In this document: positions 12,201 through 29,019 of the stretch, piece by piece
Layout: each line of letters opens with the position of its first letter
Numbering within the stretch: the first letter of the stretch is position 1
DNA from: Lepidodermella squamata
Lineage: Eukaryota > Animalia > Gastrotricha
Reading direction: 5' to 3'
NCBI GenBank assembly: GCA_047495785.1
Contig: JBLDXI010000007.1
Location: forward strand, 682,001 to 746,000
Length of the DNA: 64,000 nucleotides
Translations under genes and position numbers: made by a program
The notes under the pieces: generated by a model
What the model was told of the DNA's origin: nothing
Databases searched by the model: none
What the model saw: only the letters and a program-made list of their open reading frames with translations

Positions 12201-15200
12201 TTCGGCATCGGCGATATTCAATTTCTCTGTGATCACTTGTGATCAATGTCTCAAGTGAAAATGGGCTTCGTAAGAGGTGCGGAATCGCCAGGTTTTACGT
12301 GATAACATTTCAAGAAGTAGCCCTCTCATTATACGAAAATAATACCACTAAAACAGCACTACTACGGTAGCGTTAGGGCTACTGCTATTTCAGTGCTACC
12401 TAGCGCTTCAGAAAAAAATCGGAAAAAACACCTCGCAGTTAGGAAGGGCAGTTACCTGATTTTTCATCCCCAACCACGTGACCTCTCATCGCTCGCTCAA
12501 TTCAAGGTAACTGGCCAATGCGGGTCCTTGATTGATGGACAATCAATGCTAATTTGTATGCTAATTTGTTAGATTATTGCTATGCTTATTTGGTATGCTA
12601 ATTTGTTAGATTTCACAAATATGTAGTCTGGGCGAATTTTTAAAATGCTACGGCGTCTCTACGGCGCCGTAGTGACCCGCCGTACCGCCACCGTAGTTCA
12701 CCGTGCTGGCAGTGTCCTACTATTACGGTGCGAGTGCTATTATTTTCGACTAGAATTGTAAAGAAAAATCTCGTATTTTCGCAATTAGCACTACATTGGG
12801 CAATTGGGAAACAAAACTTGTTGGCACGGAAATGTGCACGACCGGTAAATAGCCTTGGTAAATGGCTACGAACGCAAACCTTTCCTGCGGGAATGTTGTC
12901 AAACTTGCGAGTGTTGTAACCAGTAACCAGCACCCTGGTCACTTTCTCGAAAAATGAAAAATGACATAAATAAATCAGCCAGTTTTTCATTTATGATATG
13001 TGCTCATTTTGTTGTTTCTGTTGTAGCAGCTGTGAAAAAAGCATCGCTTAATAAGTCCGAATTTTAAGCTGTCCATAGTCACAAGTGTTTAGAAACCGGT
13101 GCGTCGAAAAAGCGACGCAAAATTGATCGATCGTATAAATCGGTATGGTTTGTTTTCATTATTGCCCATATTATTAATATTAATTTCTGGCGATTGTTCT
13201 CGTGGTTTTCGACACCAAACATGGCTATTTTGCCCAAAATAAAACCGCAATAAAAATGTGAGGATGAACATTTCCGCTGATAAAACATAAAAGCTGATGA
13301 AAGATAAACTGGACTTTTCCTAATTCCTCAGTTGCGTAATCTTAACAATGCATCAAACTATGGATGAAGGTAAGGAGGGCCACGAAACCCCTCCTTCGTG
13401 TAATAAGGACGATTATAACATAATTTCGAGCCCTATTATCAATCGGCTGATGGATTAAAAAGGAATACTGCTTTTCGAATAATGGTGGTTGTAGCCAACT
13501 AATGCTCCTGTCTACATGTTGTTCGAGATGAATCTATTTGTTTCAGAAGACAGTTTTTTGAGAATTCGCTGAATTTAATGGTGATTTTTGTTACATTATT
13601 GTGGTCAATCTTAATACCCAAGAAATATCCGATCAGCGATTACAGGCCACTAGAAATTTCCAAAATTTGGGTCCGCTAACAGCCAAATCTGGTTACGCTA
13701 CAGCTAATTTGGTTCCGGCGGTAAAAGGAGGACCCATATTATTTTGTATGACAACTTCCGCGGCGAGGTGACTTTTCCTGCTAAAATACCTCCGGCTAAG
13801 TTACCCCACAGCAAGGTACTGCTGAACCAAAGCTATACAAGGCTAATTTTGTAACAAAAATGCCGTGATTTTTTCGAATTTTCGAAAATTTGAAAGTTGA
13901 GTTTTTTCAGTGATGTCGTTCGTCTTGCGACGTAAGGGACCGCCTGTGCTAGCGTATATTTCTATATACAATTATACTGCTATATGGCGGTTGTTTACAA
14001 CTGCGGCGCGGTTGTATCCCAAATTACTACTTTCGGTTCAAGGGCTATAAAATTGCCATTAGCTGCGATTGCTATCTTGCGCTCTTGGACTCTTGAAGAG
14101 AATAGAGAAATTCTGCTGCTTCTTCGCTTATCTTTTCTATGACTTTTCAAAGTTTTCTACTGCTCTTCTGGAATTCTTTGATTTAAGATTTCAAAGGTAG
14201 CAAAAGCGAACTGCCGTAAGCCGTTGCCGTGCATCTTTATTTTCAACGCAACGAAATACTCGAAAATGAACAAAGGAAATGAAACCATGAAAATAATTCA
14301 TGAAACTTTGTTTCAACAAATATGGTGATAACAGGCTGAATATATCGAAATAGCCAGCACTCAGCAATAGTAGAGTAACGACCTTTTACCGGAATTTCGC
14401 CAATTTTCCAGTTTCGATTCCCAATCAATTTCCAATATCCAATCAGCTATAACTGAAGAGGAGACTTCGAGTACAAGTTGTAGTATAATAATCCTATCAA
14501 CAATGCAGAATTTAAAATTTAATACAGCAGGATGTAGGATGCAGGATGCCCTATTTCTACTTTAATAGCTTCGGAGATATTGCAATAAGATGTTAATGAA
14601 TCATTACCAACTATTTTTGAAATGACCCATTCTAAATAGAAAGTTAATCTGATTTCTACGAAAAATTATAAATGATATTTATGAACACTTAATTTTGTTG
14701 AAAGTAGAACTCGTCCCTGGAAGTTAGCGGATAATCTTTGAAGTGTCGCAATTAGGAAACAAGCGATATTTAAAGTTTTCTGAAAGTGTATCACTTTTAA
14801 CCGACGTAACAATTTTCAAGAGGAGATGACGGCGATACTCCATTGGGTATCTAGCTAACTATGTAACTAACGATAACTAAATTAACAAGCCACAGAAATG
14901 GGAGCTTAAGCGTCGTTGAATAACTCGGATTTGGGCTTGTATATATACATATATGTCAGTTACAAGATGAATACCGTCATTTGGGGTAATCTGGGTCATT
15001 GGGGCTATTCGGACGAATGTTCATGCAAACAGGAGAATGAGCATGGCTAAAAACTACCCGGCCGTTGGCGATGAAATTTTGCACGGAGTTAGATGGAAAG
15101 ACGACCCACATGCCATAAAAATTTCATGACCTGAGAGTAAGTGGTTGTGAAGAAATGAGCTTACCTTTCAGGTGTAAGTTTAACTCAGTTTAAGCACAGT

Positions 15201-15409
15201 TCTGCGTTGAATTACCTGGACCCGAAGAGAATTTTGCTGGACCTGCGCCCAATTTTTCCTGAATCTACAGACGCTAGGTAAACCATGAAAATTAAAAACG
15301 CCCCGATCCGACTCATACTTTTGTCTAATTAATTGCGTCCGATTAGCCCCACGAAAAAATTGGAATCGGAACAGAGAAATGCGGCAGAATTGGAATATTC
15401 TAATGAGCT

Positions 15410-17494
15410 TTGTTGTTGATAAGTTCCTCAGCAAATGAGGCATACTTCGAATTTAAGAGGTTTGTAAAACTTTTGATTAAGGTTTACCGAATGAAATATC
15501 TGCGATTGAATATTAAATTTTCAAAAAATTCTTCTGACCAACAGCGAGGAAATTCTCGTGGTCCACAAAATCATGGATGGTACGATGGAAATTCTGATCC
15601 AGAATTTGAATATTTCAAGTTTTTGCACAATAAGTACGAGTCAGGCCATCTTGGCACAAGGTCACACGAGTGGCCAACGTACAACATGCTTTTTGAAAAA
15701 TTCGGCCACCAAAATTACGCAGATAAGGACGAGGACTATCAGTTTCTAACAGCTAACCGCTCAGAAAATTTCGACACAGCCAGTGAGGGTAGCCTGATCG
15801 ACGAAGAAGTTGATAGTGAAGAAGATGCCGAAATTGAGGTAGCTCGAGCTGAAAGTGACATGCTCGAAGAAACCGAGTCGGTAGCAACAAACAGGCAAAC
15901 AAGGAAGCGAACAAACCAGTCACCGTCTGATGACGCCAAAAAAGTTCGACGCGGCGACCACCAATGCGAGAAAATCCTTTCACAAGCCAGCTTTGAGAGC
16001 TATCTCCAGGAGTGGAAGACCATCCACACTACGCCTGAGGTAGAAAACGCCTGGGTGGAGCAAATGTTGTTTGGCTGGAGGAATACATCAGCCCTACAGC
16101 AACTTGAACGTATGTTTCATCACGCCCCATCTAGTCGAGCGACGCTGAAACTGTGGCACGCACTGAACCCGAGCGATAAATGGCTCCTTGTGAAGCAGTG
16201 GAACCAAACACCGATCAATAAACAGCTCAACCTCCAGAGCAGCCTAGAAAGAGGCGAAACGTTCCCTCCGATTGAACCGATGTTCATCAAAAGTGACCGA
16301 AATGAGTTCCACACGTACATGACAACAAAATCGAAACCGACAGGAAAGCAAGGCACAGGTCATCAGAACCAAAGCAGAAACCACAATCAGGATCGGAGAA
16401 ATACCGACCAAAGCGATGATGACGACTCAGAAGGAAGCGAGCCACAGACGTCTAAGTCAACACCCAGACAACCGATGGGTTGGGTAATCGACAGAGTGAA
16501 GGGTTACCTATCTAAAAGAGAAATCATGAACGAAATCGAGAAACTCGCACCGAACGCTACCTTCAAAAAAATTGTCAAGTTGCAAAAAGGAGTCATCTAC
16601 TTACTGCCAGAACCAGCAGACAGGGAAAAAGTCGACCAAATTTTCAAAACCCAAAACTTTCCATCTGATATCTTCGGAGGTCAGAAAATCTCGATCCACA
16701 GACCAGGCGAATCGGGCAGGTTGACAGGAGCAGAGGAAGCGAAGAAAGTTGTTCTAAAGAGCGTTGACCGAGACCTAACAGTGGATGACATCAGATATTA
16801 CCTTGAAAAAGCAGGATATCAACCGACTGAGTTATTCTGGTTAACTCCAGAGTCAGAGAAAACAGGACTGTGTAAGCTCGTCTTCAGCTCAGCAGAAGAG
16901 GCCGACAAACTCAGGACCGCCGGAAGGGTCGCAATAGGTCCATGCATCTACAAATGCACAATCTCAGCCCCAAAACCAAGCATACCGAGATGCTTTGTGT
17001 GCCAAGGTTGGAACCATGTCATCGGAAACTGCCCGATGCTTGCCGAGATGGGGAAAAACGCAGCCCCGCCAGAAGTACTGAACAAGTTGAGAACCTGCGC
17101 CAAGTGCGGAGGAAAAGGTCACCACAACAAAGAGTGCTCGGTTGGTACATTTCACTGCTCAAACTGCGGTAGCCCTGATCACCCAGCAACGTCACACAGC
17201 TGCCCGTCCTACGTAGAGGCAAAAAGGATGCAAGAAGAACACCAAAAAAGAAGAGCAGAAGAACGTATGACGAAAGCAACCGGTACCCTGAAACCCGCAC
17301 CGGTCCCTGCATTCAACGTGTGGGCCGAAAGGCTGGAAAGGAGCGTGGACAACCAAGTCGACATCATCCTGAAAATACTTGACCGATTAATCCCTAAGAT
17401 CGAGCAAGGCATGACGACTGAGCAAAAGCTTAAGTTAGTGAAAACCGAACTGCGCAGTATCAAAAAGGAAAATGAAAATACCAAGTCTTCATAA
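15410..17494 (+). CDS. LINE ORF1 (gag-like nucleic-acid-binding protein); first ATG at 15491
   Basis: 694-codon ORF with an RRM-like region and three CCHC knuckles: CFVCQGWNHVIGNC, CAKCGGKGHHNKEC, CSNCGSPDHPATSHSC. Directly upstream of APE-RT. Confidence 0.93.
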   Translation: MLLISSSANEAYFEFKRFVKLLIKVYRMKYLRLNIKFSKNSSDQQRGNSRGPQNHGWYDGNSDPEFEYFKFLHNKYESGHLGTRSHEWPTYNMLFEKFGHQNYADKDEDYQFLTANRSENFDTASEGSLIDEEVDSEEDAEIEVARAESDMLEETESVATNRQTRKRTNQSPSDDAKKVRRGDHQCEKILSQASFESYLQEWKTIHTTPEVENAWVEQMLFGWRNTSALQQLERMFHHAPSSRATLKLWHALNPSDKWLLVKQWNQTPINKQLNLQSSLERGETFPPIEPMFIKSDRNEFHTYMTTKSKPTGKQGTGHQNQSRNHNQDRRNTDQSDDDDSEGSEPQTSKSTPRQPMGWVIDRVKGYLSKREIMNEIEKLAPNATFKKIVKLQKGVIYLLPEPADREKVDQIFKTQNFPSDIFGGQKISIHRPGESGRLTGAEEAKKVVLKSVDRDLTVDDIRYYLEKAGYQPTELFWLTPESEKTGLCKLVFSSAEEADKLRTAGRVAIGPCIYKCTISAPKPSIPRCFVCQGWNHVIGNCPMLAEMGKNAAPPEVLNKLRTCAKCGGKGHHNKECSVGTFHCSNCGSPDHPATSHSCPSYVEAKRMQEEHQKRRAEERMTKATGTLKPAPVPAFNVWAERLERSVDNQVDIILKILDRLIPKIEQGMTTEQKLKLVKTELRSIKKENENTKSS

Positions 17495-20267
17495 TATGTC
17501 ATATCAACGCAAATCGACTTACTAAGGCAAGAATCATAGAACTGAAAACCATAGCAAGAACATTCAACGTAGACATTATTTGCATCAATGAAACTTTCCT
17601 GAAACCTCACAAGACTTTCTATCTGAAAGGTTACAAGGTTTTCCGACACGACCGCCTACATATAGACGGCGGCGGGGTTGCCATACTAATAAGAGAAGGA
17701 ATAGAATGCGAAGACCTAGGAGGCTCAACCATAGACAACTGTGAAATTCAGATGGCACAAATTAAACTTGAAGGCGTAGCAGCCATCAAAATAGTTTCAG
17801 TATACTGCCCGCCGACCATCATTCTGTCCGATGCCGCCATGGCACACATCAAACCCGATGTAGACACGATCATGTGCGGTGACTTCAACGCGCATGACTA
17901 TGCTCTAGGCACAACCGGTAGGCTCGACGCTAGCGGGGCAAAACTAGTATTTCACCTACGCAACTCTAAGTTAAAACTACTGTCGCAGGGTGAACACACG
18001 TACACAACGCGTAAAGGCAGAAAGGAATGCCTCGATCTATTCATAGCCGGTGAAAAAGCAGCTAAGCGGGCGGTATCAGTCGAGGTTCTACCAGACATAG
18101 GATCTGACCACCTGCCAGTAGCACTACATGTAAGAGTAACGGCCAAGGCCCCTAGTAGCTTCCCTGAACTTCGTCTAAACTTGGATGCAATGAAAACAGA
18201 ACAATTTAAGGACGAAATCGACAAAATGTGTGAAAGGTTCGACACTACCGACCTGACTTCGATAGAGAAGATCGACGCAGCAATAGAAAATCTTGAATCA
18301 ATAGTAAACCAAGCGACGACTACCACTACACCGAAATGTGTAGCCGGCAAACTCAGAGGCTGGCGACTAACAGCAGAGATTAAGACCGCCATAGACGAAA
18401 GAAGAGCAGCAAGAAGGGCTTGGGAGCTTTCACGCTCAAGCCGAATGAGAACAAGGTATAACGCAGCCACAAGAAAGGTCAAGTACCTTGTTGCTAAAGA
18501 AAGAGCAGGGCGATTTAAAAGACGGTGTACCGAGTTATCCAAAATGTTGAAAGACAAACCCAGACTATTCTGGAAAGAATTCCACGTTCTATCGAACAAC
18601 ACCTTAGCATCGAATCAGAGACAATATCCGCCAATCAAAGACAGCACAGGCCTTGACCAGTTCACAAACTCTGGGAAGGCGACAATCTTTGCAGACCACC
18701 TCCAAACGGTCTGGAAAACACCCGATGATCCAAAGTTTTGTAAAGATACAGAAGAGTTAGTAGAAAAAACGTTGAAAAAATACAAACATGAAATTGAACG
18801 ACCGAAAGTAGCTAGACGTGACCGGTCTGGAAGATGGACGGTCAAACCTGGTGAGGTGGCTACGCTAGTCAAGCGACTGAAGAATACAGCACCAGGGGAG
18901 GATGGTATCATGAATGCCGTCCTTAAGCGAGCGCCTGACAGCTACTGGGTTAAAGCTACCGATATTTTTAATGCCTGTTTAAAATTCAGTTTTTTCCATC
19001 AAAATGGAAAAAAGCCGTCGTAGTCCTCATTCCTAAAGAGGGCAAGGACTGGAAAAGCCCGAAGGGGTATCGACCGATCAGCCTACTTAACTCGCTCGCA
19101 AAAATTCTCGAGAGACTGGTAGCCCGTAGAGTATTGGAAGAGATGCGGGAGCGGAAAATTATGCCGCTTAGTCAATCCGCCTTCCAAAACAAGCACTCCG
19201 TAGAGGATCACCCCTTCCGTATTGCGCAACTTGCCATTACAGGTCTCATCGAAAGCGAAGAAACCTACGTGACATGTTTAGACATCGAGGGCGCATTCGA
19301 TCGAATCTGGCAAAGGGCAGTCATATACAAAATGCTGACCTTTGGCTTTCCCGACATTGCCACAGCATGGGTCGCGGACTTCCTGAATAAACGCTCGTTC
19401 TGCTGTAGGGTCGGCAACGACCATAGTACGGTTAGAGAGATCACCGGGGGTGTGCCACAGGGTTCGCCCCTGAGCCCGATCCTCTATGTCCTTTACACCG
19501 CTGACTTGCCCAGAGAAATCCCGAACACTGTCATGAACAGCTTGTTCGCAGACGACGTTGCTCTAGCTGCGAAGCACAAAACGCCAGCAGTGGCAATAGC
19601 CCGAATGAACGCAGGCCTGAGAAAAGTCTCTGACTACTTTAACCGGTGGAGATTGAAGGCGAATGCGGGTAAAAGTCAAGCCCTGCGAATCTCCAACCGA
19701 ACGAGGGCGCCGCCATCAGCAATCCAGCTAGATGGATGCGACCTCGAATGGCACGAATCAGTGAAATACCTCGGGGTTCTGATCGACAAAAAGCTGCTAT
19801 TCAAAAAGCAAGTGGAAAGTGCCATCGCGAAAGCCTCCGTCAGAATTACAGCGCTACATGCGGTCTGTAGGAAAAACTTTGGTCTTTCCAAGGAGGCGGC
19901 AGTTTTGGTTTACACCACTTACATCAGACCCGTCTTGATTTTCGGCTGTCAAGCATGGCTTGGAATTGACAAAGGACTTTGGAAGAAGCTCGAAACACTG
20001 CAAAACCAAGCTTTGAGAATTGCCTTGCGACTAGCGCCTTGGCATAGCACAGCAGATACGCTGGCAAGAGCGAAGGTTGAGCCCATCAGGGTTTACGCTA
20101 CCAGATTAGCGACAAATTGGCTAACCAGATCGATCGAACACAACAACCTCGTTGGCAGAGAATCTGCTCTGCAACTAAAGCGTCCAATCGACTTGAGAGT
20201 CTACCGTAACGCGAAACGATCGCCGCTCTCGGCGATGAGGCTAGCCTTAGAAGGTCGGCGTCCGTAA
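17476..20267 (+). CDS. LINE ORF2 (APE endonuclease + reverse transcriptase, Jockey/I group) with one frameshift at ~18995
   Basis: Open from 17476 in the -1 frame relative to ORF1: IICHINAN, DIICINETFL, GGGVAILI, VYCPP, GDFNAH, SDHLPV. After the T-run: WKKAVVVLIPK, YRPISLL, LDIEGAFDRIW, GVPQGSPLSPILY, FADDVA, VKYLGVLID. Confidence 0.93.
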
Positions 20268-20398
20268 CTACACTAATATTTTATAGCTAACACTTGCCTG
20301 TTCAACCAGCGACACCCACGCAAGACTCGGGCTTCTCACAGGCTCGGTCCTCTGTTTGGGTGGTTTACTAAGTGCCTATTTCCAATTTTTAACTTTCG

Positions 20399-20490
20399 GC
20401 TCAGATCCGCTCAAGCCCGAACCCTAAGCGCTCCGTTTCGTGACGTTAGGGCGGGGGCCTTAGGCAAGCCCACTCGGCGTGGATCTGAGC
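20399..20490 (+). ncRNA. Structured RNA motif, copy 1 (LINE 3' UTR)
   Basis: Closing stem GCTCAGATCC/GGATCTGAGC, inner stem CCCTAA/TTAGGG preceded by GTGACG, hairpin GGGC/GCCC, then TCGGCGTGGATCTGAG. Confidence 0.55.
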
Positions 20491-20505
20491 AATGTATAAA
20501 TCGAA

Positions 20506-20598
20506 CCGAACTCATCCACAGCCGTACCTTATGCACTCTGTTTCATGATGATAGGGCGGGGCCTTAAGCAAGTCCACTCGGCGTGGCTCTGGGTTCGG
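20506..20598 (+). ncRNA. Structured RNA motif, copy 2 (LINE 3' UTR)
   Basis: Diverged tandem copy: CCGAAC/GTTCGG, CCTTAT/ATAGGG, ATGATG, GGGC/GTCC, TCGGCGTGGCTCTGGG. Substitutions mostly preserve pairing. Confidence 0.55.
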
Positions 20599-20753
20599 AC
20601 CTCGAAAATCGTAGGACCAGTCTAGGCTACAATCCCTGGATGCCCGGCCCTGAATGATCTGCTGTCAGAGATTTCAGCGACGACCCTAAAAAGTCCGCTA
20701 GGCGCCAGGTTGAGTGTACTGATGACGACTCGGAAGATTACGATCTACATATA

Positions 20754-23700
20754 CAGGGTGTTCTTTTTAAAACCGAACATCCTGCCGTAGTCGCGAAAAA
20801 TAAATTTGCCGGCTATTTTACAAAAATAATTTTACTAAAATAATTTTTTATCACTTTTAATATACATTTTTAATTTTATTTTCAATTGCACGATACCCTT
20901 GAATTTTAGCGCGCGTTGCCACGTCGACGCGTCGGTTTTTAAATTTTAGCGGTTAAAACGCCTGAAATCAGGGTTTTCGCGCCTGGTTCCTAAGGTAACC
21001 GGCAAGCGCGCGGCTCTTTGCCGCGCATCATTCAAGTCAGTTAAGCGAGCTAAATGTTTTAGCCGCGCCGTTTTTTCTTATTCGGTTTCAGTTTTCGCAA
21101 TGTGGTATACCCAAAATCGGTGAAAAGAGCCTTAAATTGCGCTTCCTTGCCGTTGAAATCCACCGCTGGAATCAAGAAGACGGCGGTGCAACGTGGTTTT
21201 CTGCTGTCTTGAGGAGTCTAATGATATAACAAGCGGCCTTGAAAACTTGTCGCTCAAGTTTCAGTCCGCGGATCAGAGAAACGCACCCTTTTCTGGGCGA
21301 AATGCAATGCAACTAGCTGTTTCACGATGAAAAGGGCAGTGGTATCATGTAAATAAACGGAAAGCTGGGGGGAAACATGTCGAATTTACTGGCATAGATG
21401 TTGCTGATGCGGAAGACACGTTGCCTTCCTTCTTTATCCTTGATGTTCTCTCATCCTTGTGTGATACTTCGTCGTCCGCAGTGAGGCCGTAGCTAACTTC
21501 TATAGACTAATTAAAGCTGATCTCAAAGGCGTTACCACCGTTATCATCAAAGCTGTCTCGTAGAACATGTTCATAATATCAAAAAGAAAAAATACAAGGT
21601 ATTTTAGATTACGATGATTTAGCCGCTCAGTTCATTTCGTTTGCTGCTGTTCGTAACATCAGTCATGTTCCTTACTAAGGATAGTGGTTTACAAGTCAGC
21701 GTAGCTTGGTGCTTAGTAAGGACTGTCATCCTAATAGTCATAACTATGGACACTCACTCTTCACTATACGCCGCGTCTTTTAAGATGCACAGGTCCATCT
21801 GAGATCAGATCCTTAGATCGCTCAGTCTGAAGCGGCGAAGTCTGAGTAAGGATTGTTGAGTAAGCCATTCCTACCAAGCATACCAGTGACACCGCGTCCT
21901 TACTTGGAAGCCATCTTGCTAAGGATGTCTTGCTTAGTAAGGACATCCTTAGTAAGGAATTCCTTATAGCAAGATTGCTTTCAAGTAAAGAGAGCGCTTA
22001 GCATCTCTTTTACTCATAAATGCATCCTTAACATCCATAGCATGGAAAATCAACATCGCTAGGCTATGAACAGCCGTTTATTTGCACCATTCAGATCAAG
22101 TTGAGTGTTTAACAAAACGTCATGTAAACTTTAACATCATTGGCAGCATCCGGCGCGCGGCGTGAGTCGTTAAGAGTGAGAATTTAGCATCATTTTCGGC
22201 GAAAAATTCATTGGTATCACTGGATCCGCCGGAGATTTGAAAACAGCCGATGACTGAGACAACGCTTAGGACTGATAACCGAGATCTTATTCAGACATTG
22301 ATCACTCGTTTGCGGCGGCGCAGGGCAGAGGCGGGAATATTCCGTGGTGATGCCCGTGTCCTGTCATCCATTTCCCTGCGGTAACCGCAGTTGCGGGCGG
22401 GTGTAACTGTTTGTGAGACTGCGGTAACAAAGCAAGTTTAACACCACGCCAGTCTTTGTCTTTTATATGCATCCCTTTGATCTCTGATTCTACGCGTCCT
22501 GTAAGAACAGTCCAGCATTCTCGCATAGATTTTACGTTTCTTGTAATATTTTAGTGGTAAACTATTTGATTGATGTAACTTCAAGCGCAATAAGTCACAA
22601 TAATATAACGCGCCCCACCCGCTGAATTTCCCGGAGAAATAGAAGAATAAGCGAAAACAAACGATTTCAAACCTTAGCCCTAATGCGGCCGCTGAAAACC
22701 AGTAGCAGCGGCTGAAATGTGTCAACGGGTAAAGTCTTTTGCAGAATTTTAACACGATTAAAGCTATATATTCACACAATGCCTAAAATTCATGCATCGA
22801 CGTCATATGGCCCCATAAATCACGAAGGATTGCGGCTACAACGCGTTGAAACGTCCTCTAACAAGGATGGTATGGTATCAGAAAGCCGACCCAGCGCTCG
22901 AGTTAGGGCGGCAACACCAGCATTTTTCTGCTTTATTGTCAAACTGACATCTTCTCTTAGCAAGTTCACTTATGTTGGCCAAAATTTAACCGCTAAATTA
23001 TTTGCTACGACCAAAAATATCCCGAAAAACCCGAAAAAACCCGAAAAATGCATGCCAAGCCACTTAAAGCGGAAAACCGCGTTGTCCAACCTAAAAATAA
23101 TGGTAACAAAGAAATATACAGTTTATTCTACAAGAAAACCATGAGAAAGATTGTTCTTACCAGATTATTTCATGAAATGGGCTATCCTTACGGTTGCTGA
23201 TCTGACTCAATGATGACGTCTAACCAGAGTGTGTAGGGCAGACGAAAGTCGATCCTGCGCTCGAATTACGGCGGCAACACTAGCTTTTTCCTGATTTGTC
23301 GTCATATTGATATAGTCTCCAAGCAAAATCACCCAATTTTACCCATATCTGACCGTTGATTATTTCCCAGCATCAATAAATGTTCCGATAAACCCGAATA
23401 ACTCCATTTTAACGCCTAAATGCATCCTAAGCCGTAAAACGAGAAAAACCACGGTGACCCCCCAAAAAGACATGGTAACTAAGAAATTTACACTCTATTC
23501 TACCAGAAAACAATGAGTAACAATGCTAATTAAGCAAAATTCATGACATGGACCATCTTGAAGATCGTTCATCTTGCCAGAGGATGAGATCTAACACAGC
23601 AGGTATGGCAGAAGGAAGTCCCTCCTGCTCACGAGTTAGTATGGCAACACCGACTTTTTCTTGTTTCATTGTCAAAGTATTTATGTCTCCTAGTGAATTC

Positions 23701-24512
23701 ACTCATTTGAGCCCCCATTTGACCGCTGAATTGTTTGCTAACATTGTAAATGTTCCGAATATCCCGAAAAACTCCATTTATCGACAGAATGCAGCAGCAA
23801 GTGAAAAACCGCGGTGACCCTCCAAAAAGTGACGGTAACTAAGTAGTATTTACTCTGCTTTACAAGAAAACAATGAGAGACAGTGTTTTTGACGGGTGAT
23901 TTTAAAGCATAGACCTCCTTGAAGATGGTGATAATGAGATCTATGCTCTGAAAGACCGGCTGGCTGTTAGGGCAGACGTGCTAAAAATAACCATCATCCT
24001 ACAAAAACGGCTGTGGTAATCTTGTAGAGAATACATTACTGTACTTAGAAACACTGTTTCCGCAAGGTATAACCGCACTTAGGTGAAAGTTTCCCGGGTT
24101 AAACGCTTAAGATCTGCGAAAAACGGCATAAAAATGGCTTGTTTAGGCTTAGCGCATACGTCTAATTGAGCCATATTTAGAAAAAATGACGCCGGCTGCC
24201 TTATTAAATGCTTGAAATGCTATCAGAAAAACACTAACAAAGGTGTCGTCACCGGTGATAAAATGCGGAATTACGGGGATGAAGTTGCGCGCCGGGGAAC
24301 TTGCGGTGCGCGGAGCGGCTACAACGCGAAAACGCGCGGCATCGCGCAGCACGCTTTTCCGTAGCAACAAAATTTTTATTTAAAAAAAATTATTAATATA
24401 ATAAAATAAAAATATTTTTAAAAGGATATTTAATTTTGTGCATAAAAATTTGCGGTAGCACGCGATTTTCCAACGCGCGCGGCGGATGTTCGGTTTTAAA
24501 AAGAACACCCTG
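20754..24512. mobile_element. Non-autonomous Tc1/mariner-type element (3.76 kb)
   Basis: Perfect TIR CAGGGTGTTCTTTTTAAAACCGAACATCC at both ends, TA TSD at 20752-20753 and 24513-24514. No transposase ORF. Confidence 0.92.
22860..23890. repeat. Three diverged ~365-bp tandem repeats inside the Tc1-type element
   Basis: Anchor TACMAGAAAACMATGAG recurs at ~23128, 23501 and 23861. GGCAACAC, GAAAAMCRCG and GGTAAC recur in register. Confidence 0.8.
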
Positions 24513-24753
24513 TACATGTTTTCTGAATGATTTAATTTTAGCCTGTCTTTATTTCAACTTCGAAGGCGCTGGATCCGGAACTATGTGAGCATGACTAAGT
24601 TTTTACTTTAATTTTCTACTATCGAACAAGTTGTATTTTGGCTCTTTATTTTTCGGTAAGAAATGTATGAGGGTGCCCACTTAGACGTTTAAGGCTTGAT
24701 ATTTTTTACAACACACTCAACACGCAACGGACGTCGAATAAAACACATATATT

Positions 24754-24940
24754 TGGTTAAGGACAGTAAATTTGGCATGGCGAAAGCCTACAGGATGAAT
24801 GCCCGTCTGATCCATTTTATGCATCAGGTCGACTGTGATCCTCCGATTGCAGTGACGCTGTAGGGACCGACTTGATGGTCCGATCGGCGTGGCTCTTCTG
24901 AGCCAAATGCCCCAGTAGGTTAGGGGGGGGGGGGGGGAAT
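24754..24940 (+). ncRNA. Structured RNA motif, copy 3 (left direct repeat of the ORF1-only unit), box C/D-like closure
   Basis: ATTTGGC...AGGATGA (24792)...GTGACGCTGTAGGG, hairpin GGACC/GGTCC, GATCGGCGTGGCTCTT-CTGA (24898)-GCCAAAT, then CCCCAGTAGGTTA and G15. Confidence 0.6.
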
Positions 24941-25152
24941 TTTCTGAGGTTACTGTCGTTACGAACCCGAGTGGTGTTCCTTAGAACGCGCACTCTTGAT
25001 TATTTTCAAACAATTTCTGCTGCTGTTTTTATCGATACGCCAACTTCGTCAGATATTTCCAACAACAAGCTGCTTCAACATCAAGCTGTACGTTATCGAT
25101 CGATACTACTACAAGCGCGCGGCAATCCCATTCATCGATTCAACCACGTGGC

Positions 25153-26139
25153 ATGGCTTCAACAATGAATGCTACTGAAAAATATGCATGGGATTTCTTC
25201 AATGGTTTCTTTCCGGAATACAAAGCAAATCTGATCGAAAAAATTGGTTATTCCAGTATTAGCCGCATCCTTAGGGCGTATGCCTCCTTGCTCGACCTCG
25301 ACCAGGCTGAACGAGACTTCCTACTCGATATGATGGAAGCCGATGAATTTGGAGAAAATCGCTGGATCATCCATGAACGGAACTGCGACGATAAGTCAAC
25401 CCAAACAAGGCCGATTAAGCCGATTGTCCAACTGAATAAGTCAACCGAAACCGAACCGATCGTTCGTGTTAAGCCAAAACGTGTTAAGCCAATCCTACCG
25501 CCTAAGAAAACAAGCGAAACTACTGTTCTACTCCAAACGAATCCGAACTGCGACCGGAAACAACTCTGGTCTAAAATCGTGGCTTCGGCACCGAACGCCA
25601 GCTTCAAGAGCTGTAAGCCAACAGCAGATGGGCTGTCTATTCGTCTCGATTCGAGCGAACAGGCGGCTCAGATCCGATGTCTGGAAAAGATTCCTGGTGC
25701 GAAAATCATTCAAACTGCTAAGCCGAAATACCGAATTGTGTTGACCAACTTCGACACCGATGCTGTATCAACGACTGCGATCAAGGCTGCCTTTGGCGAC
25801 AAGATGACTAAGATGGTCGAACTACGCGGCAAACAAGCTATGTTCGAGCTCAACGACTACGATCTTGCTGAAAATTGCGTGAAAAACGGCCTGATTTGCA
25901 AGCCGTTCATGTTACGATTCCGATGGTTTATTGTCAAGCAATCTGATGTTGTTCAATGTTTCAACTGCCAGCGATATGGCCACCTGGCTCGAAACTGCTC
26001 TGATGAGACGCGATGCTTACGATGTGGTCGCAAACACGACGTGAAGACTTGCTTGCGGGGTGTTCGTTGCTGCAATTGTGGTGGCGAGCACACCGCGAAC
26101 TCGAGGGATTGCCCTCTGCGCCGGCCTTCGGCTGGCTGA
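25153..26139 (+). CDS. Stand-alone LINE-ORF1/gag-like protein (328 aa), no ORF2 downstream
   Basis: Intact ORF ending in three CCHC knuckles: CFNCQRYGHLARNC, CLRCGRKHDVKTC, CCNCGGEHTANSRDC. Preceded by an RRM-like segment. Confidence 0.9.
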   Translation: MASTMNATEKYAWDFFNGFFPEYKANLIEKIGYSSISRILRAYASLLDLDQAERDFLLDMMEADEFGENRWIIHERNCDDKSTQTRPIKPIVQLNKSTETEPIVRVKPKRVKPILPPKKTSETTVLLQTNPNCDRKQLWSKIVASAPNASFKSCKPTADGLSIRLDSSEQAAQIRCLEKIPGAKIIQTAKPKYRIVLTNFDTDAVSTTAIKAAFGDKMTKMVELRGKQAMFELNDYDLAENCVKNGLICKPFMLRFRWFIVKQSDVVQCFNCQRYGHLARNCSDETRCLRCGRKHDVKTCLRGVRCCNCGGEHTANSRDCPLRRPSAG

Positions 26140-26290
26140 AACGAAAGTTTCATGGGAAATTGCAATGCAATTTCAAGACGGGTTGGGGGGTAACCTAGTT
26201 GCTCATCCACTCTAAATTTGGGAAAATTTTTAAGGACGGGATAGTTTTGGTCCCAAGGGGCGGGTTCTGGGTCTAAGTGGTGACGGCGGG

Positions 26291-26439
26291 TGGTTAAGTT
26301 GGTCCCACTTTGGCTACATGATGAATCCGCTGCCAGGTCCGTCTGTGATCTTCCATCACAAGTGACGCTGTAGGGGCAAATTTGATAGCCCGATCGGCGC
26401 GGCTCTGAGCCAAATTCCCCAGTAAGTTAGGGGGGGAAT
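26291..26439 (+). ncRNA. Structured RNA motif, copy 4 (right direct repeat of the ORF1-only unit), box C/D-like closure
   Basis: TTTGGC-TAC-ATGATGA (26318)...GTGACGCTGTAGGG, hairpin GGGC/GCCC, GATCGGCGCGGCT-CTGA (26405)-GCCAAA, then CCCCAGTAAGTTA and G7. Confidence 0.6.
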
Positions 26440-26550
26440 GAAAGGCTAGTGCATGTGGCATGAATTAAAAATTCGCTAATTTACTACTTCTAATTAAAAA
26501 ACTAACTAAAAGCTAAAAACCATCGATATGCACTGCATTCGAATAATTGC

Positions 26551-26645
26551 AAAAAAATTGTTTCGTGGCCTGGACTCGAACCCTCGTTTTGTACTTTGCT
26601 GTGTTTTCTAGAAGCACATCCAAAGCCACTCGACCACTGAACACA
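26551..26645 (-). pseudogene. tRNA-derived (Ser-AGA-like) Pol III unit, not a canonical tRNA
   Basis: Minus strand has A box TGGTCGAGTGG, CTAGAAA, B box GGTTCGAGTCC and a T7 terminator. Acceptor and T stems pair poorly. Confidence 0.6.
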
Positions 26646-29019
26646 ACACATCAGTAATATTTGAATTGAATATTTATGTATCATTAATAGCCCCACACCT
26701 GTCCGAATAGCCCCATCCATGGGGCTATTCGGAATCCTGGTGCCATTGGAATCAGGACCTTCTGAAACGTGTAAAAATGCAAAAAATCAGGGGGTAATTT
26801 TTTTTCGCCGTCCGGATAGCCCCAACTGACGGTAGTGACAAGTGAAAGGTAATTGGAACGTTTTTATGCGAATGAAGAGGGGAACTTGTCACCCATCAAC
26901 TGCCTGTAACTGACGTGAACAAGCCCGAATCCGAGTTATTCAACGACACTCACAACTACGGAGTAGTGAGGCGATGCATCCTGCTTTGACTGCTTTGGTT
27001 CAGCTGTTTTCTTCCCTTTCAAAACGAAGAATGTCTACATCTATTGGAGACTAATTAAGCTCCTTAAAAGTGTTACATTTGAAACCCCAGAGCAGATCAG
27101 ATTTGTCTCTAAAAAGCTGCGCTTGCCAAGCAGAACAGATCGCTCCAGTTGCTTCAGAGATCTACCCGTAACTCATCTTGAAGTAGGCGCCTTTTTTGCC
27201 TTCACTTACTCTGAAACTCTGAGAATTATTTTGCATTTGCATTTGCCAATAGATCGGTTTGAAGTGCCGTAAGCATTCCTGATAGCCCTAATTACAGATA
27301 AGATTCCAGCCAAAATGACCAAGTGGATGCGCTTTGTAAATTATACTTCTGCGCATGATTGTTTTCTTTGATAACTATTAGTCCGTGGCATTTTGCTCTT
27401 GTATTGGCATTTTGATCGTAGTATTTCATTAGGAAGTTAGCGCAAAAATCGTGAAATGCCATCCCAATCCCCATCCCAAATGCCCAAACTTGAATGGTGG
27501 GTCAGGTTTTGTCGTATACGAATCAAGCCAATAATTATGTACGAATAGTCGAAAAGCTGTACATATTATGCACATATAGTCGAAAAACTGTACTACATAA
27601 ATATGTACGAACATCCCCTTCGTATCAAAATATCTGCGAATGGAGAAGGAACAAAAAAAACAGATTTTATCAGGCACCCCTCTGACCAATCACGGTATGA
27701 CTAACCCCTATTTTTGCCTGCGTGCTGTCCACGTGAACCGAGGCTTGCGGCCGTAAACTTTCTCTTCTGAGAAAATTCTGTTTCGAACCCAGGACCTCTG
27801 TGCAACCAGTGTTTCAACAAATGGTGATAGTCATGATTCAACTAGACTATACAGAGATACAGAAAAGTATACTTGAGAATGAACTGTTTTACCCTATGAG
27901 TTTACCCTATGGATATTGAGAAAAATAGATAGAATTATCCTAGACTACGCTTAAAGGAAACGAAGGTGAAATAAGGAAGAATAGGATAAATTTGGTTGAT
28001 CTTAAGAATTTAGCCATGATATAACGGAGAAATTGTCTGAAGCGTTTGTGCTCAGCACGCATTCTGGTAGGCGTTGCAACCGCACGGTATCGGATGCGCC
28101 GCAATAATGATGCTATTACCGACGAATACAAAGTAGCTTATACCAGTACCAAGTATTTTATTACCAAGAGCATGAAAGTACTGCCAAACGAGGTCTCTTA
28201 CGTCGCAACACGAACGATGTATGCTAGGAAATTGATAACTACTTTGGCAGTTTTCGTTGCTCAAATTCTCTCACTCAGCTATGTTTCGCTATTTTCTGTA
28301 AAACATGGCCATCAAATGCCCCAGAATGGAATTCAAAAAATTGTGCGCAATTATTTTTAAATGCGATTCTCGAAGTTTGATTGAAAATTTAGGTCACGGG
28401 AAGCTATTGCGAGTATGAGGCTTTATTTTTTCAAAGGCCTTGAAAAGGGGGGTTTTGTAAATGGGACGGGCGGTAATAACGGGTATATGAAGCTATTACG
28501 GAAAATACGGTATTCAAAAATACGGTATTCTGTCGCATGAAATCCGCGGACGACAGCCGAGGGATAGTCACAGTCGTATGCGCACAAAACAATGACACGC
28601 GCGGGCGCTGAGACAGTGTCGCGCGCGGCTAATTTTTATATCAAAGGAAACCAAATTTGCAAAAAACTTGTCCAACTAAGTTTTTAACCAGAAAAATCGT
28701 TATTTTCGACATCAGTTACCCTATTTCCGCGTATTTTCATCGAAATTTGATAATTTAATTATTTTCACCTAGCGAACGGTATGAATAAGTGTTACAGTGA
28801 TAAAACACACCTCAGTGATGCGGCGTGCTACTCTGATCATCGTAGGCTGGTGCTGATGCTGAATTGAAGGCGATGGGGCATTGGAAATGTATCGTTTCTG
28901 AATCAGAAGCGCAATCAGAGTCAGTTGACCCGAAAAAAGGACTTTTGACGGACCCAGGAATTTGATCCAAATATCGGATCTCGCAGTGAATTTTCGGCAG
29001 TTGAAGTGTTAAGGACTTA

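What the first reader, a model, noticed from the sequence alone, without database searches (positions are those of the whole stretch)
24754..26439. Stand-alone ORF1/gag gene bracketed by two structured direct repeats that match the neighbouring LINE's 3' UTR motif
Seen: an intact 328-aa ORF1-type protein with three CCHC knuckles has no ORF2 and no poly(A) tail. It lies between two diverged ~150-190-bp direct repeats that lack LTR hallmarks (no TG...CA, PBS or PPT) and end in GTTA-G-run-AAT. The repeats share GTGACG..TAGGG, a G/C hairpin and TCGGCGYGGNTCTGAG with two copies in the 3' UTR of the full LINE upstream. The protein differs greatly from that LINE's ORF1 (328 versus ~670 aa), so it is not a simple deletion derivative. 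Established: ORF1-only partners of LINEs exist (HeT-A, HAL1), but I know of none bounded by such repeats. Inference: a non-autonomous retroelement that supplies its own RNP protein and recruits the LINE RT through a shared RNA structure.
Basis: partly seen in the sequence, partly recalled or inferred. Interest (0 to 1): 0.88.

Follow-up and report, generated by a model that had tools for sequence, protein, structure and literature searches.

The report
Gag-only retrotransposon targeting spliced-leader genes
The ORF1-only unit is a real, multicopy jumping gene that makes only a Gag-like RNA-binding protein and borrows the copying enzyme of a neighbouring LINE; both aim at the spliced-leader RNA gene in the rDNA repeat, and the "bracketing repeats" are just the matching tails of two separate elements.

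Summary
The ORF and the two similar ~105-bp stretches are real. The "bracketed by direct repeats" reading is wrong.

- **The 5' repeat.** It is the 3' end of the upstream LINE, whose 3' UTR is split by a Tc1-like insert (20754-24512).
- **The gag-only element.** It runs from a 19-nt leader piece at 15497-15515, then 24938-26436, and is flanked by the duplication AATGAAA.
- **The nesting.** The LINE sits inside the element's leader, with duplication AATTTTC.
- **The shared target.** It is the exon of a spliced-leader (SL) RNA gene, with about 420 copies, one per 8.46-kb rDNA unit. An RNA run confirmed trans-splicing.
- **Transcription.** Dispersed copies begin at SL position +1, which implies transcription from the SL gene promoter.
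- **Age and selection.** Gag-only elements form several subfamilies with open ORFs. The C-terminal module has dN/dS of 0.07-0.24. It is only 21% identical to the LINE ORF1.
- **Shared tail.** The elements share the LINE's structured ~100-nt tail and variable G-run.
- **Other species.** Public contigs show the same LINE tail next to SL-like exon ends, and a gag-only relative.

Other first readers of this scan had already flagged a gag-only and LINE pair at one rDNA spacer site elsewhere in this genome. No note I retrieved named that site as an SL gene. I rate it a new variant of known kinds (HeT-A/TART-like partnership; SL-gene-specific LINEs).

The parts
15490..15496 (+). Left copy of the 7-bp target-site duplication AATGAAA that flanks the whole composite (gag-only element with the LINE nested in it)
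   Evidence: Read directly; the same 7 bp recurs at 26437-26443.
15497..15515 (+). First 19 nt of the gag-only element's leader (TATCTGCGATTGAATATTA). This equals the 5' part of the SL exon and is separated from the rest of the element by the LINE insertion.
   Evidence: The same 19 nt directly precede the AATTTTCTGAGG leader in dispersed copies L004, L027, L009 and L002, inside their own duplications. It matches the intact SL gene in L036.
15516..15522 (+). AATTTTC: SL-exon bases duplicated by the LINE insertion (left copy)
   Evidence: The same 7 nt recur at 24938-24944 right after the LINE G-run. A 5'-truncated LINE piece in L002 has the longer duplication (A)ATTTTCTGAGG.
15523..20753 (+). 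Autonomous-type LINE (family 1), first part. It holds ORF1 (three knuckles, ends 17494), ORF2 with APE endonuclease and reverse transcriptase (open from 17476, interrupted between 19023 and 19134, ends 20267), and the start of a ~900-nt 3' UTR with two tail-like motifs.
   Evidence: ORFs and Pfam hits for Exo_endo_phos_2 and RVT_1. About 10 near-full copies at 97-98% identity elsewhere in the genome.
20754..24512 (.). Non-autonomous Tc1/mariner-like TIR element inserted in the LINE 3' UTR, with a TA duplication at 20752-20753 and 24513-24514
   Evidence: Terminal inverted repeats CAGGGTGTTC.../...GAACACCCTG. The uninterrupted LINE copy L030 has a single TA at that point.
24515..24937 (+). End of the LINE 3' UTR, including the structured tail (24823-24925) and a 15-nt G-run (24923-24937).
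   Evidence: L028-L030 are contiguous from window 20755 into 24513. Covariance model hit at 107 bits.
24938..25152 (+). Rest of the gag-only leader and 5' UTR. It holds the remaining SL exon (AATTTTCTGAG), about 45 nt resembling the start of the SL intron, and then unique sequence.
   Evidence: Compared with the intact SL gene L036. Copies L004-L010 start here.
25153..26139 (+). Gag-like ORF of 328 aa: a variable N-terminal helical part, a linker, an RRM-like module and three Cys-His knuckles
26140..26436 (+). Gag-only 3' UTR with the structured tail (26333-26432) and a 7-nt G-run (26430-26436).
26437..26443 (+). Right copy of the target-site duplication AATGAAA
   Evidence: Read directly.

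Best explanation
Window 15497-15515 plus 24938-26436 is one copy of a gag-only, non-autonomous non-LTR retrotransposon. It encodes a Gag-like RNA-binding protein of about 330 aa and no reverse transcriptase.

Shown:
- It has many copies with their own target-site duplications and 5' truncations.
- Its ORF is under purifying selection.
- It ends in the same ~100-nt hairpin tail and variable G-run as two autonomous APE+RT LINE families.
- It sits at the same nucleotide of the same target as those LINEs.

The target is the exon of the spliced-leader (SL) RNA gene, one copy per rDNA unit. The bottom-strand nick falls between ...AATATTA and AATTTTC..., about 11 nt before the SL splice donor.

Inferred:
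- The LINE ORF2 protein recognises the shared tail and copies gag-only RNA in trans, while the element coats its RNA with its own Gag.
- Copies sitting in SL genes are transcribed from the SL gene promoter, because dispersed daughter copies begin at SL +1.
- The gag-only leader keeps a whole SL exon, and therefore the LINE's target site.

The retained target explains the window's layout. A LINE lies inside the leader of a dispersed gag-only copy. It either landed there or was copied together with the element from a stacked rDNA array. Its tail therefore sits just upstream of the gag ORF and imitates a flanking direct repeat.
For: - **Repeat reassignment.** L028-L030 join LINE 20755 directly to 24513-24937. 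The Tc1-like insert has a TA duplication.
- **Copies and ends.** There are at least 10 full-length copies at 88-94% identity plus truncated ones. Independent duplications include TATGCTAGATG (L004), CCCATATGCCGGCTG (L027), CTATGTTT (L002), CAGCAAAAGACTA (L017) and AATGAAA (window). G-runs range from 7 to 24 nt.
- **Coding constraint.** There are 18 intact full-length gag ORFs of 325-361 aa in 17 loci, plus a 175-aa partial ORF. The C-terminal dN/dS is 0.07-0.24 with dS above 1 between subfamilies.
- **Not a recent deletion derivative.** hhalign gives 98.5% probability over 187 columns but only 21% identity to LINE ORF1. LINE ORF1s form their own clade with 98/97 support.
- **Target.** Rfam finds 18S, 5S and 28S flanking the site. 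An RNA run has depth of about 266,000 only over the 33-nt exon. Contigs continue after ...CTGAG into single-copy loci right after AG acceptors, including the RPS8 5' UTR. There are about 420 intact SL genes spaced 8.46 kb apart and about 50 G-run/SL junctions.
- **Both LINE families occupy the site**.
- **Tail.** A covariance model finds it in every family and in other species. Helices 2-5 are 100% paired, with GC/AU swaps in helix 3. The tail of gag-only subfamily B is 86-88% identical to the LINE1 tail but 71-72% identical to the subfamily A tail.
- **Other species.** LINE relatives L034 and L035 end in tail, G-run, then an SL-like exon end with a GT donor. The gag-only relative L037 has an ORF, the tail and no ORF2.
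Against: - No experiment or RNA end-mapping shows mobilisation in trans or transcription from the SL promoter. The only RNA-like run is contigs, and coverage of the gag body is no higher than over the neighbouring spacer.
- About half of the ~96 tails lie outside SL genes, so specificity is a strong preference rather than absolute.
- Covariation in the tail is modest, because most of it is simply conserved. Helix 1 is only 66% paired in the model alignment.
- The RT clade of the LINE was not determined.
- The other-species contigs are short and of unknown organism, and L037 is cut within the tail.
Confidence: 0.8

Rival explanations
1. The LINE plus gag-only composite in the window was made in one step. 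A read-through transcript of a stacked array in an SL gene (SL start, LINE, G-run, gag-only, G-run) was reverse-transcribed as a unit and inserted at AATGAAA. On this view the LINE did not land later in a resident gag-only leader.
For: A single outer duplication AATGAAA flanks both elements, and the composite starts at SL +1. The same LINE-then-gag-only stacks exist inside rDNA SL genes, for example L003, so a template was available.
Against: The structure is equally what sequential insertion predicts. L002 shows a 5'-truncated LINE piece with its own 11-12-bp duplication inside a gag-only leader, so leaders are used as targets. Nothing here dates the two events.
Confidence: 0.35
2. One reading: one element whose body is bounded by two structured direct repeats, in an LTR-like or HeT-A-like terminal redundancy.
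For: Two 82%-identical stretches do flank the ORF in this window. L002 and L003 show the same layout.
Against: At least seven other copies start at 24938 with no upstream repeat, and copies with their own duplications exclude it. The upstream repeat is contiguous with the LINE in L028-L030. In L002 and L003 the upstream tail is also a LINE fragment.
Confidence: 0.03
3. The gag-only element is a recent internal-deletion derivative of the neighbouring LINE, in the manner of R2 SIDEs or deleted L1s.
For: It shares the 5' SL-derived start and the 3' tail with the LINE. Its C-terminal module is homologous to LINE ORF1.
Against: Identity in the shared module is only 21%. The N-terminal 130 aa are unrelated, and the LINE ORF1 tail after the knuckles is absent. 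Gag-only proteins from other species group with it, not with LINE ORF1s. Several old subfamilies all keep the ~1.5-kb gag-only layout.
Confidence: 0.04
4. The gag-only elements are mobilised by some other reverse transcriptase in the genome, not by the two SL-targeting LINE families.
For: About half of the copies lie outside SL genes, with varied duplications. That could hint at a less specific enzyme.
Against: The LINE itself also has dispersed 5'-truncated copies with the same G-run, for example L040. The tail, the G-run and the exact SL nick site are shared only with these LINEs.
Confidence: 0.08

Closest known systems
HeT-A with TART/TAHRE (Drosophila telomeric non-LTR retrotransposons)
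   Same: A Gag-only element with the three-knuckle Gag type lives beside RT-encoding relatives. It aims at the same specialised multicopy target and forms head-to-tail stacks. It persists as its own evolving lineage.
   Different: The target is the SL RNA gene in the rDNA unit, not chromosome ends. The element ends in a structured tail and a G-run, not poly(A). I saw no sign of a 3' promoter driving the downstream neighbour; transcription appears to come from the target gene's promoter. The Gag is about 330 aa, against about 900 aa for HeT-A (that figure is from my own knowledge).
SL-gene-specific LINEs: CRE1/CRE2, SLACS, CZAR (trypanosomatids) and NeSL-1 (nematodes)
   Same: They insert at a fixed position inside the spliced-leader exon, in the gene's orientation. 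Element RNAs begin with the first SL nucleotides, which implies use of the SL promoter.
   Different: Those families carry a restriction-like endonuclease (PMC4640811). This lineage has an APE-type endonuclease and a separate three-knuckle ORF1. I know of no gag-only partner described for those families, and my searches found none.
APE-type target-specific LINEs (R1 clade: R1, TRAS, SART; Tx1 clade: Keno, Mutsu)
   Same: APE endonuclease plus RT, a Gag-like ORF1, insertion at one nucleotide of a multicopy RNA gene, and precise 3' junctions.
   Different: An SL exon is not among the listed targets of the APE-type groups in the papers I could search. Clade membership by RT phylogeny was not tested. 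About half of the copies are dispersed.
HAL1 (half-L1) and stringent-type SINE/LINE pairs
   Same: HAL1 is an ORF1-only LINE derivative. SINEs borrow the partner LINE's 3' tail for recognition by its RT.
   Different: HAL1 carries an L1-type ORF1 and a poly(A) tail. SINEs are non-coding. This element combines a protein under selection with a borrowed, partly swapped tail.
R2 SIDEs (short internally deleted elements in rDNA)
   Same: Non-autonomous passengers of a site-specific rDNA-resident LINE that share its ends.
   Different: SIDEs are non-coding recent deletion products. This element encodes a divergent, conserved Gag and forms old subfamilies.

Membership tests
Non-autonomous non-LTR retrotransposon dependent on a partner LINE | Variable target-site duplications and 5'-truncated copies (signature of target-primed reverse transcription) | tested here: met
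   Duplications of 7-15 bp at the window, L002, L004, L009, L017 and L027. Truncated copies include L011-L022 and L041-L043.
Non-autonomous non-LTR retrotransposon dependent on a partner LINE | No reverse transcriptase of its own | tested here: met
   There is a single ORF. About 300 nt of 3' UTR follow it up to the G-run in all full copies, and all subfamilies are about 1.5 kb.
Non-autonomous non-LTR retrotransposon dependent on a partner LINE | 3' end shared with an autonomous LINE in the same genome | tested here: met
   The tail is 72-88% identical to the LINE tails and ends in the same G-run. One covariance model hits all of them at 95-111 bits.
Non-autonomous non-LTR retrotransposon dependent on a partner LINE | Mobilisation in trans by the LINE ORF2 protein | not testable with these tools
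   Needs a retrotransposition or in vitro TPRT assay.
   Copies L004, L009 and L027 have duplications that exclude any 5' repeat. The 5' repeat is the LINE's end.
HeT-A-type telomeric gag-only element | Gag-only coding capacity with three Cys-His knuckles | tested here: met
HeT-A-type telomeric gag-only element | Arrays at chromosome ends, with a poly(A) tail | tested here: not met
   Copies lie in rDNA SL genes or at dispersed internal sites, and the 3' end is a G-run.
SL-gene-specific LINEs (CRE/SLACS/CZAR, NeSL) | Insertion at a fixed position within the SL exon | tested here: met
   About 50 junctions of G-run followed by A(A)ATTTTCTGAG|GT. The SL identity rests on trans-spliced contigs.
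SL-gene-specific LINEs (CRE/SLACS/CZAR, NeSL) | Restriction-like (PD-(D/E)xK) endonuclease C-terminal to the RT | tested here: not met
   ORF2 has an N-terminal APE domain (Exo_endo_phos and Exo_endo_phos_2) and ends soon after the RT.
R1 or Tx1 clade of APE-type target-specific LINEs | Placement inside that clade in an RT phylogeny with reference elements | not tested
Hits to solved structures were only generic L1 and R2 RTs.
Spliced-leader RNA gene (identity of the target) | The exon sequence is found at the 5' end of many unrelated mRNAs, joined at AG acceptors, and the gene has a GT donor right after the exon | tested here: met
   Depth is about 266,000 over the exon only, with diverse continuations after ...CTGAG. 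Two continuations were mapped to single-copy loci immediately after AG. The donor is GAG|GTTAGT. No Rfam SL family matches.

The most novel reading that the evidence does not exclude
This is an old, cross-species two-component retrotransposon guild that parasitises spliced-leader RNA genes. An APE-type LINE lineage converged on the target otherwise used by the restriction-like-endonuclease CRE and NeSL elements. Gag-only partners have survived as an independent lineage by three means. They swap tails to match the current LINE. They are transcribed from the SL promoter. They keep a complete SL exon at their 5' end, so their mRNA starts like a trans-spliced mRNA and the leader also serves as a portable landing pad for the LINE.
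Probability: 0.35. Interest if true: 0.75.

Novelty: new variant of a known kind. Interest (0 to 1): 0.62.

Why it matters
Gag-only partners of LINEs are rare. HeT-A and HAL1 are the textbook cases, and HeT-A is usually explained by its special telomere role. A second, unrelated system would let that explanation be examined elsewhere. Here a Gag-only lineage has stayed under selection beside RT-encoding relatives, at a different specialised target and apparently in several species. That makes it possible to ask why a parasite of a LINE keeps its own RNA-coating protein.

The finding also adds an APE-type lineage to the short list of elements that insert into spliced-leader exons. That is a case of convergence on one target by different endonuclease types.

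As a by-product it identifies this animal's SL RNA gene: a 30-33-nt exon, about 420 copies, inside the rDNA unit beside the 5S gene. About a tenth of those copies are interrupted. This bears on other notes in the scan about operons and unpaired acceptors.

Tried and rejected
- **Word-indexed homologue search.** The search with the gag protein gave one weak knuckle-only hit. The exhaustive profile search was needed to find relatives.
- **RNA evidence.** No run is on record as RNA and all runs are contigs. They proved the SL but cannot show the element's transcript ends or expression. Depth over the gag body is no higher than over the spacer.
- **Literature searches.** Searches for the SL sequence found nothing. 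The copepod SL paper describes a different, 46-nt leader.
- **Organism identity.** I could not determine it. An interstitial (TTAGGG)n next to L042 argues against an arthropod or nematode, despite the insect-like Gag type.
- **Structure prediction.** The gag protein model was poor (mean pLDDT 53), so I ran no fold search. It only suggests an N-terminal three-helix part, a disordered linker and two beta-alpha modules before the knuckles.
- **Energy-based folding.** Folding of single tails is not distinctive; z-scores ran from -2.0 to +0.5. Support for the structure comes from conservation across families and a few compensatory pairs.
- **First model alignment.** Adding the two internal LINE 3' UTR motif copies degraded it, and they do not match the tail model at E 0.01 or better.
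- **Solved structures.** The sequence search gave only generic L1 and R2 RT matches, so the clade stays unassigned.
- **Considered and rejected.** An LTR-like element, a telomeric HeT-A analogue, a recent deletion derivative and a host gene family.
Full report
**1. What is in the window**

The 328-aa ORF at 25153-26139 is intact. It has three Cys-His knuckles, one canonical by Pfam. It is followed by about 300 nt that end in GTTA plus seven G.

Two stretches flank it, 24825-24929 and 26334-26436. They are 82% identical over 107 nt. Weaker copies of part of the motif lie in the 3' UTR of the upstream LINE at 20417-20487 and 20522-20591. The raw observation is therefore real, although the similarity spans about 105 nt rather than 150-190.

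**2. The 5' "repeat" belongs to the LINE**

A search of the whole genome with 24754-26439 found many copies. Most full copies start at query position 185, which is window 24938. The first 184 nt occur separately.

Mapping the loci back to the window showed that three LINE copies (L028-L030) run without a break from window 19494-20755 into 24513-24991. The window's LINE is therefore interrupted by a foreign element. That element has terminal inverted repeats CAGGGTGTTC... and a TA duplication. The uninterrupted copy L030 has a single TA there.

So 24515-24937 is the end of the LINE's 3' UTR, finishing in a 15-nt G-run.

**3. True ends of the gag-only element**

Independent copies are flanked by their own duplications:
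- TATGCTAGATG (L004)
- CCCATATGCCGGCTG (L027)
- about 13 bp (L009)
- CTATGTTT (L002)
- CAGCAAAAGACTA (L017, which is 5'-truncated)

Inside the duplications the element begins (AAA)TATCTGCGATTGAATATTA followed by AATTTTCTGAGG... It ends GTTA plus 7-24 G.

In the window those first 19 nt lie at 15497-15515, just before the LINE. The same 7 bp, AATGAAA, flank 15497 on the left and 26436 on the right. AATTTTC occurs at 15516-15522 and again at 24938-24944.

The layout is therefore nested. A gag-only element carries a LINE inserted 26 nt into its leader, and a Tc1-like element sits in that LINE's 3' UTR. An earlier first-reader note (s1-421581) had guessed the contiguity; it is confirmed here.

**4. 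The common target is the spliced-leader RNA gene**

Many gag-only and LINE copies share identical flanks that are 97-100% conserved over at least 3 kb. Rfam places these between the 28S 3' end and the 18S 5' end, next to a 5S gene. The elements are antisense to the rRNA genes.

I laid public runs on L005:1350-3080. One run had a depth of about 266,000 confined to the bin holding (AAA)TATCTGCGATTGAATATTAAATTTTCTGAG. Many different sequences followed the final G.

Two of those continuations map to single-copy loci on large contigs, each immediately after an AG acceptor. One is the 5' UTR of a ribosomal protein S8 gene.

In the genome the exon is followed by GTTAGT. There are about 420 intact copies, spaced about 8.46 kb apart, one per rDNA unit. 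This is an SL RNA gene. No Rfam family matches it.

About 50 copies are interrupted, with a G-run followed by A(A)ATTTTCTGAG|GT. This supports notes s1-365947 and s1-398113, which had suspected trans-splicing. It also reinterprets the "rDNA spacer hotspot" that several other notes reported (s1-368309, s1-398025, s1-379547, s1-365914).

**5. Transcription from the SL promoter (inferred)**

Dispersed daughter copies begin at the SL start. L002 begins with AAATATCTG and the others with TATCTG. These bases are not part of the LINE body.

The simplest reading is that source copies sit in SL genes and are transcribed from the SL +1 position. By my own knowledge this has been reported for SLACS in trypanosomes.

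The gag-only leader keeps the whole exon plus about 45 nt resembling the start of the intron. It therefore carries the LINE's target wherever it goes. L002 and L003 show further LINE pieces in gag-only leaders, and L002's piece has its own duplication (A)ATTTTCTGAGG.

I cannot tell whether the window's composite arose by a later LINE hit or by reverse transcription of a read-through RNA from a stacked array.

**6. The element is a living lineage, not debris**

Eighteen intact full-length gag ORFs of 325-361 aa occur in 17 loci, plus a 175-aa partial ORF. They fall into several subfamilies.

The C-terminal 210 codons have dN/dS of 0.07-0.24, including between subfamilies with dS above 1. The N-terminal ~100 codons differ almost completely and are combined mosaically.

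A profile comparison with LINE ORF1s gives 98.5% probability over 187 columns, covering an RRM-like module plus the knuckles. Identity is only 21%.

In a tree of that module, the four LINE ORF1s form a 98/97-supported clade on a long branch. Two come from this genome's LINE families and two from other species. Gag-only proteins from this genome group with three proteins from other public assemblies. The tree is unrooted and contains long branches.

**7. Link to the LINEs**

Two LINE families, about 69% identical in ORF2, occupy the same SL site. Copy L031 has an ORF1 of 807 aa and an uninterrupted 939-aa APE+RT frame.

All LINE and gag-only 3' ends share a ~100-nt tail with the same set of hairpins, then CCCCAGTARGTTA and a G-run. 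A covariance model built from them scores 95-111 bits on every family. It also finds the tail in other-species contigs.

Helices 2-5 are 100% paired across 13 sequences, and two pairs of helix 3 show GC/AU swaps. Helix 1 is conserved as a hairpin but is poorly aligned.

The tail of gag-only subfamily B is 86-88% identical to the LINE1 tail. It is only 71-72% identical to the subfamily A tail, although the two Gag proteins are each other's closest relatives. That pattern fits tail exchange or mimicry. Mobilisation in trans remains an inference.

**8. Specificity**

About 96 tails exist genome-wide and about half lie in SL genes. Dispersed copies include gag-only fragments and a 264-nt LINE1 fragment at 99.6% identity. 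The enzyme prefers the SL site but is not restricted to it.

**9. Other species**

LINE ORF2 relatives at 49-53% identity occur on short public contigs. Two that I inspected end with the tail and a G-run. These are followed by TTGTCTAAG|GTATGT (L034) or AATTTCTTCAG|GTTTGT (L035). Both look like the end of an SL-like exon with its donor.

Contig L037 encodes a 463-aa Gag relative (E 2e-65). About 330 nt of non-coding sequence and then the tail follow the ORF, with no ORF2 in between. The contig begins ...GAAATTTTGAG|GTCAAT. The organisms behind these contigs are unknown.

**10. Comparison with known systems**

The partnership works like HeT-A with TART, but at a different target and with different ends. 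The target choice matches CRE/SLACS/CZAR and NeSL, which carry a restriction-like endonuclease (PMC4640811), whereas this lineage is APE-type.

My full-text searches found no APE-type SL-targeting LINE and no gag-only partner of a site-specific LINE. That is absence from that library only.

I therefore rate it a new variant of known kinds, of real interest to transposon biologists.

Noticed in passing
window 20754-24512: A 3.76-kb non-autonomous Tc1/mariner-like element with a TA duplication, inserted in the LINE 3' UTR. It holds three ~370-bp tandem units (23067-23902) and no long ORF.
   Followed up: partly
L005:1-4524 and L036: The rDNA unit is about 8.46 kb. Its spacer carries both a 5S rRNA gene and the SL RNA gene, on the strand opposite to 18S/28S. 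About 420 SL genes are intact and roughly a tenth are interrupted by these elements.
   Followed up: yes
window 20417-20487 and 20522-20591: Two tandem copies (about 105-nt spacing) of a partial tail-like motif lie inside the LINE 3' UTR and are also present in LINE family 2 (L031). They do not match the tail covariance model at E 0.01 or better. Their role is unknown.
   Followed up: partly
L017:1380-2260 versus window 15381-15496 and 26437-26834: A second, independent, 5'-truncated gag-only insertion with its own 13-bp duplication sits at about the homologous position of a paralogous copy of the window's host repeat. This may be a secondary hotspot. Its right duplication edge lies at ACTA^AATTTTAC, which resembles the SL site.
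   Followed up: partly
L042:821-880: The 3' flank of a dispersed gag-only fragment contains four tandem TTAGGG units, so the animal probably has TTAGGG-type telomeric repeats. The elements' own 3' end (GGTTAGGG plus G) contains one such unit.
   Followed up: no
window 15410-15522: The LINE ORF1 frame happens to stay open through the SL-derived leader into the flank. An ATG is created by the duplication (aATGaaa at 15491-15493). The listed 694-aa ORF therefore overstates the element's own ORF1.
   Followed up: partly
window 14909-14946 and 26702-26733 / 26883-26956: Short matching stretches (...GGGGCTATTCGGA...-type) on either side of the composite also appear in inverted orientation in L023. 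They look like pieces of a small repeat or MITE in the host sequence.
   Followed up: no
G000:C31:587725-587756: An exact SL-exon-plus-donor match lies on a large contig outside the rDNA arrays, about 700 bp from gag-only copy L020. It could be a stray SL gene or another element leader.
   Followed up: no
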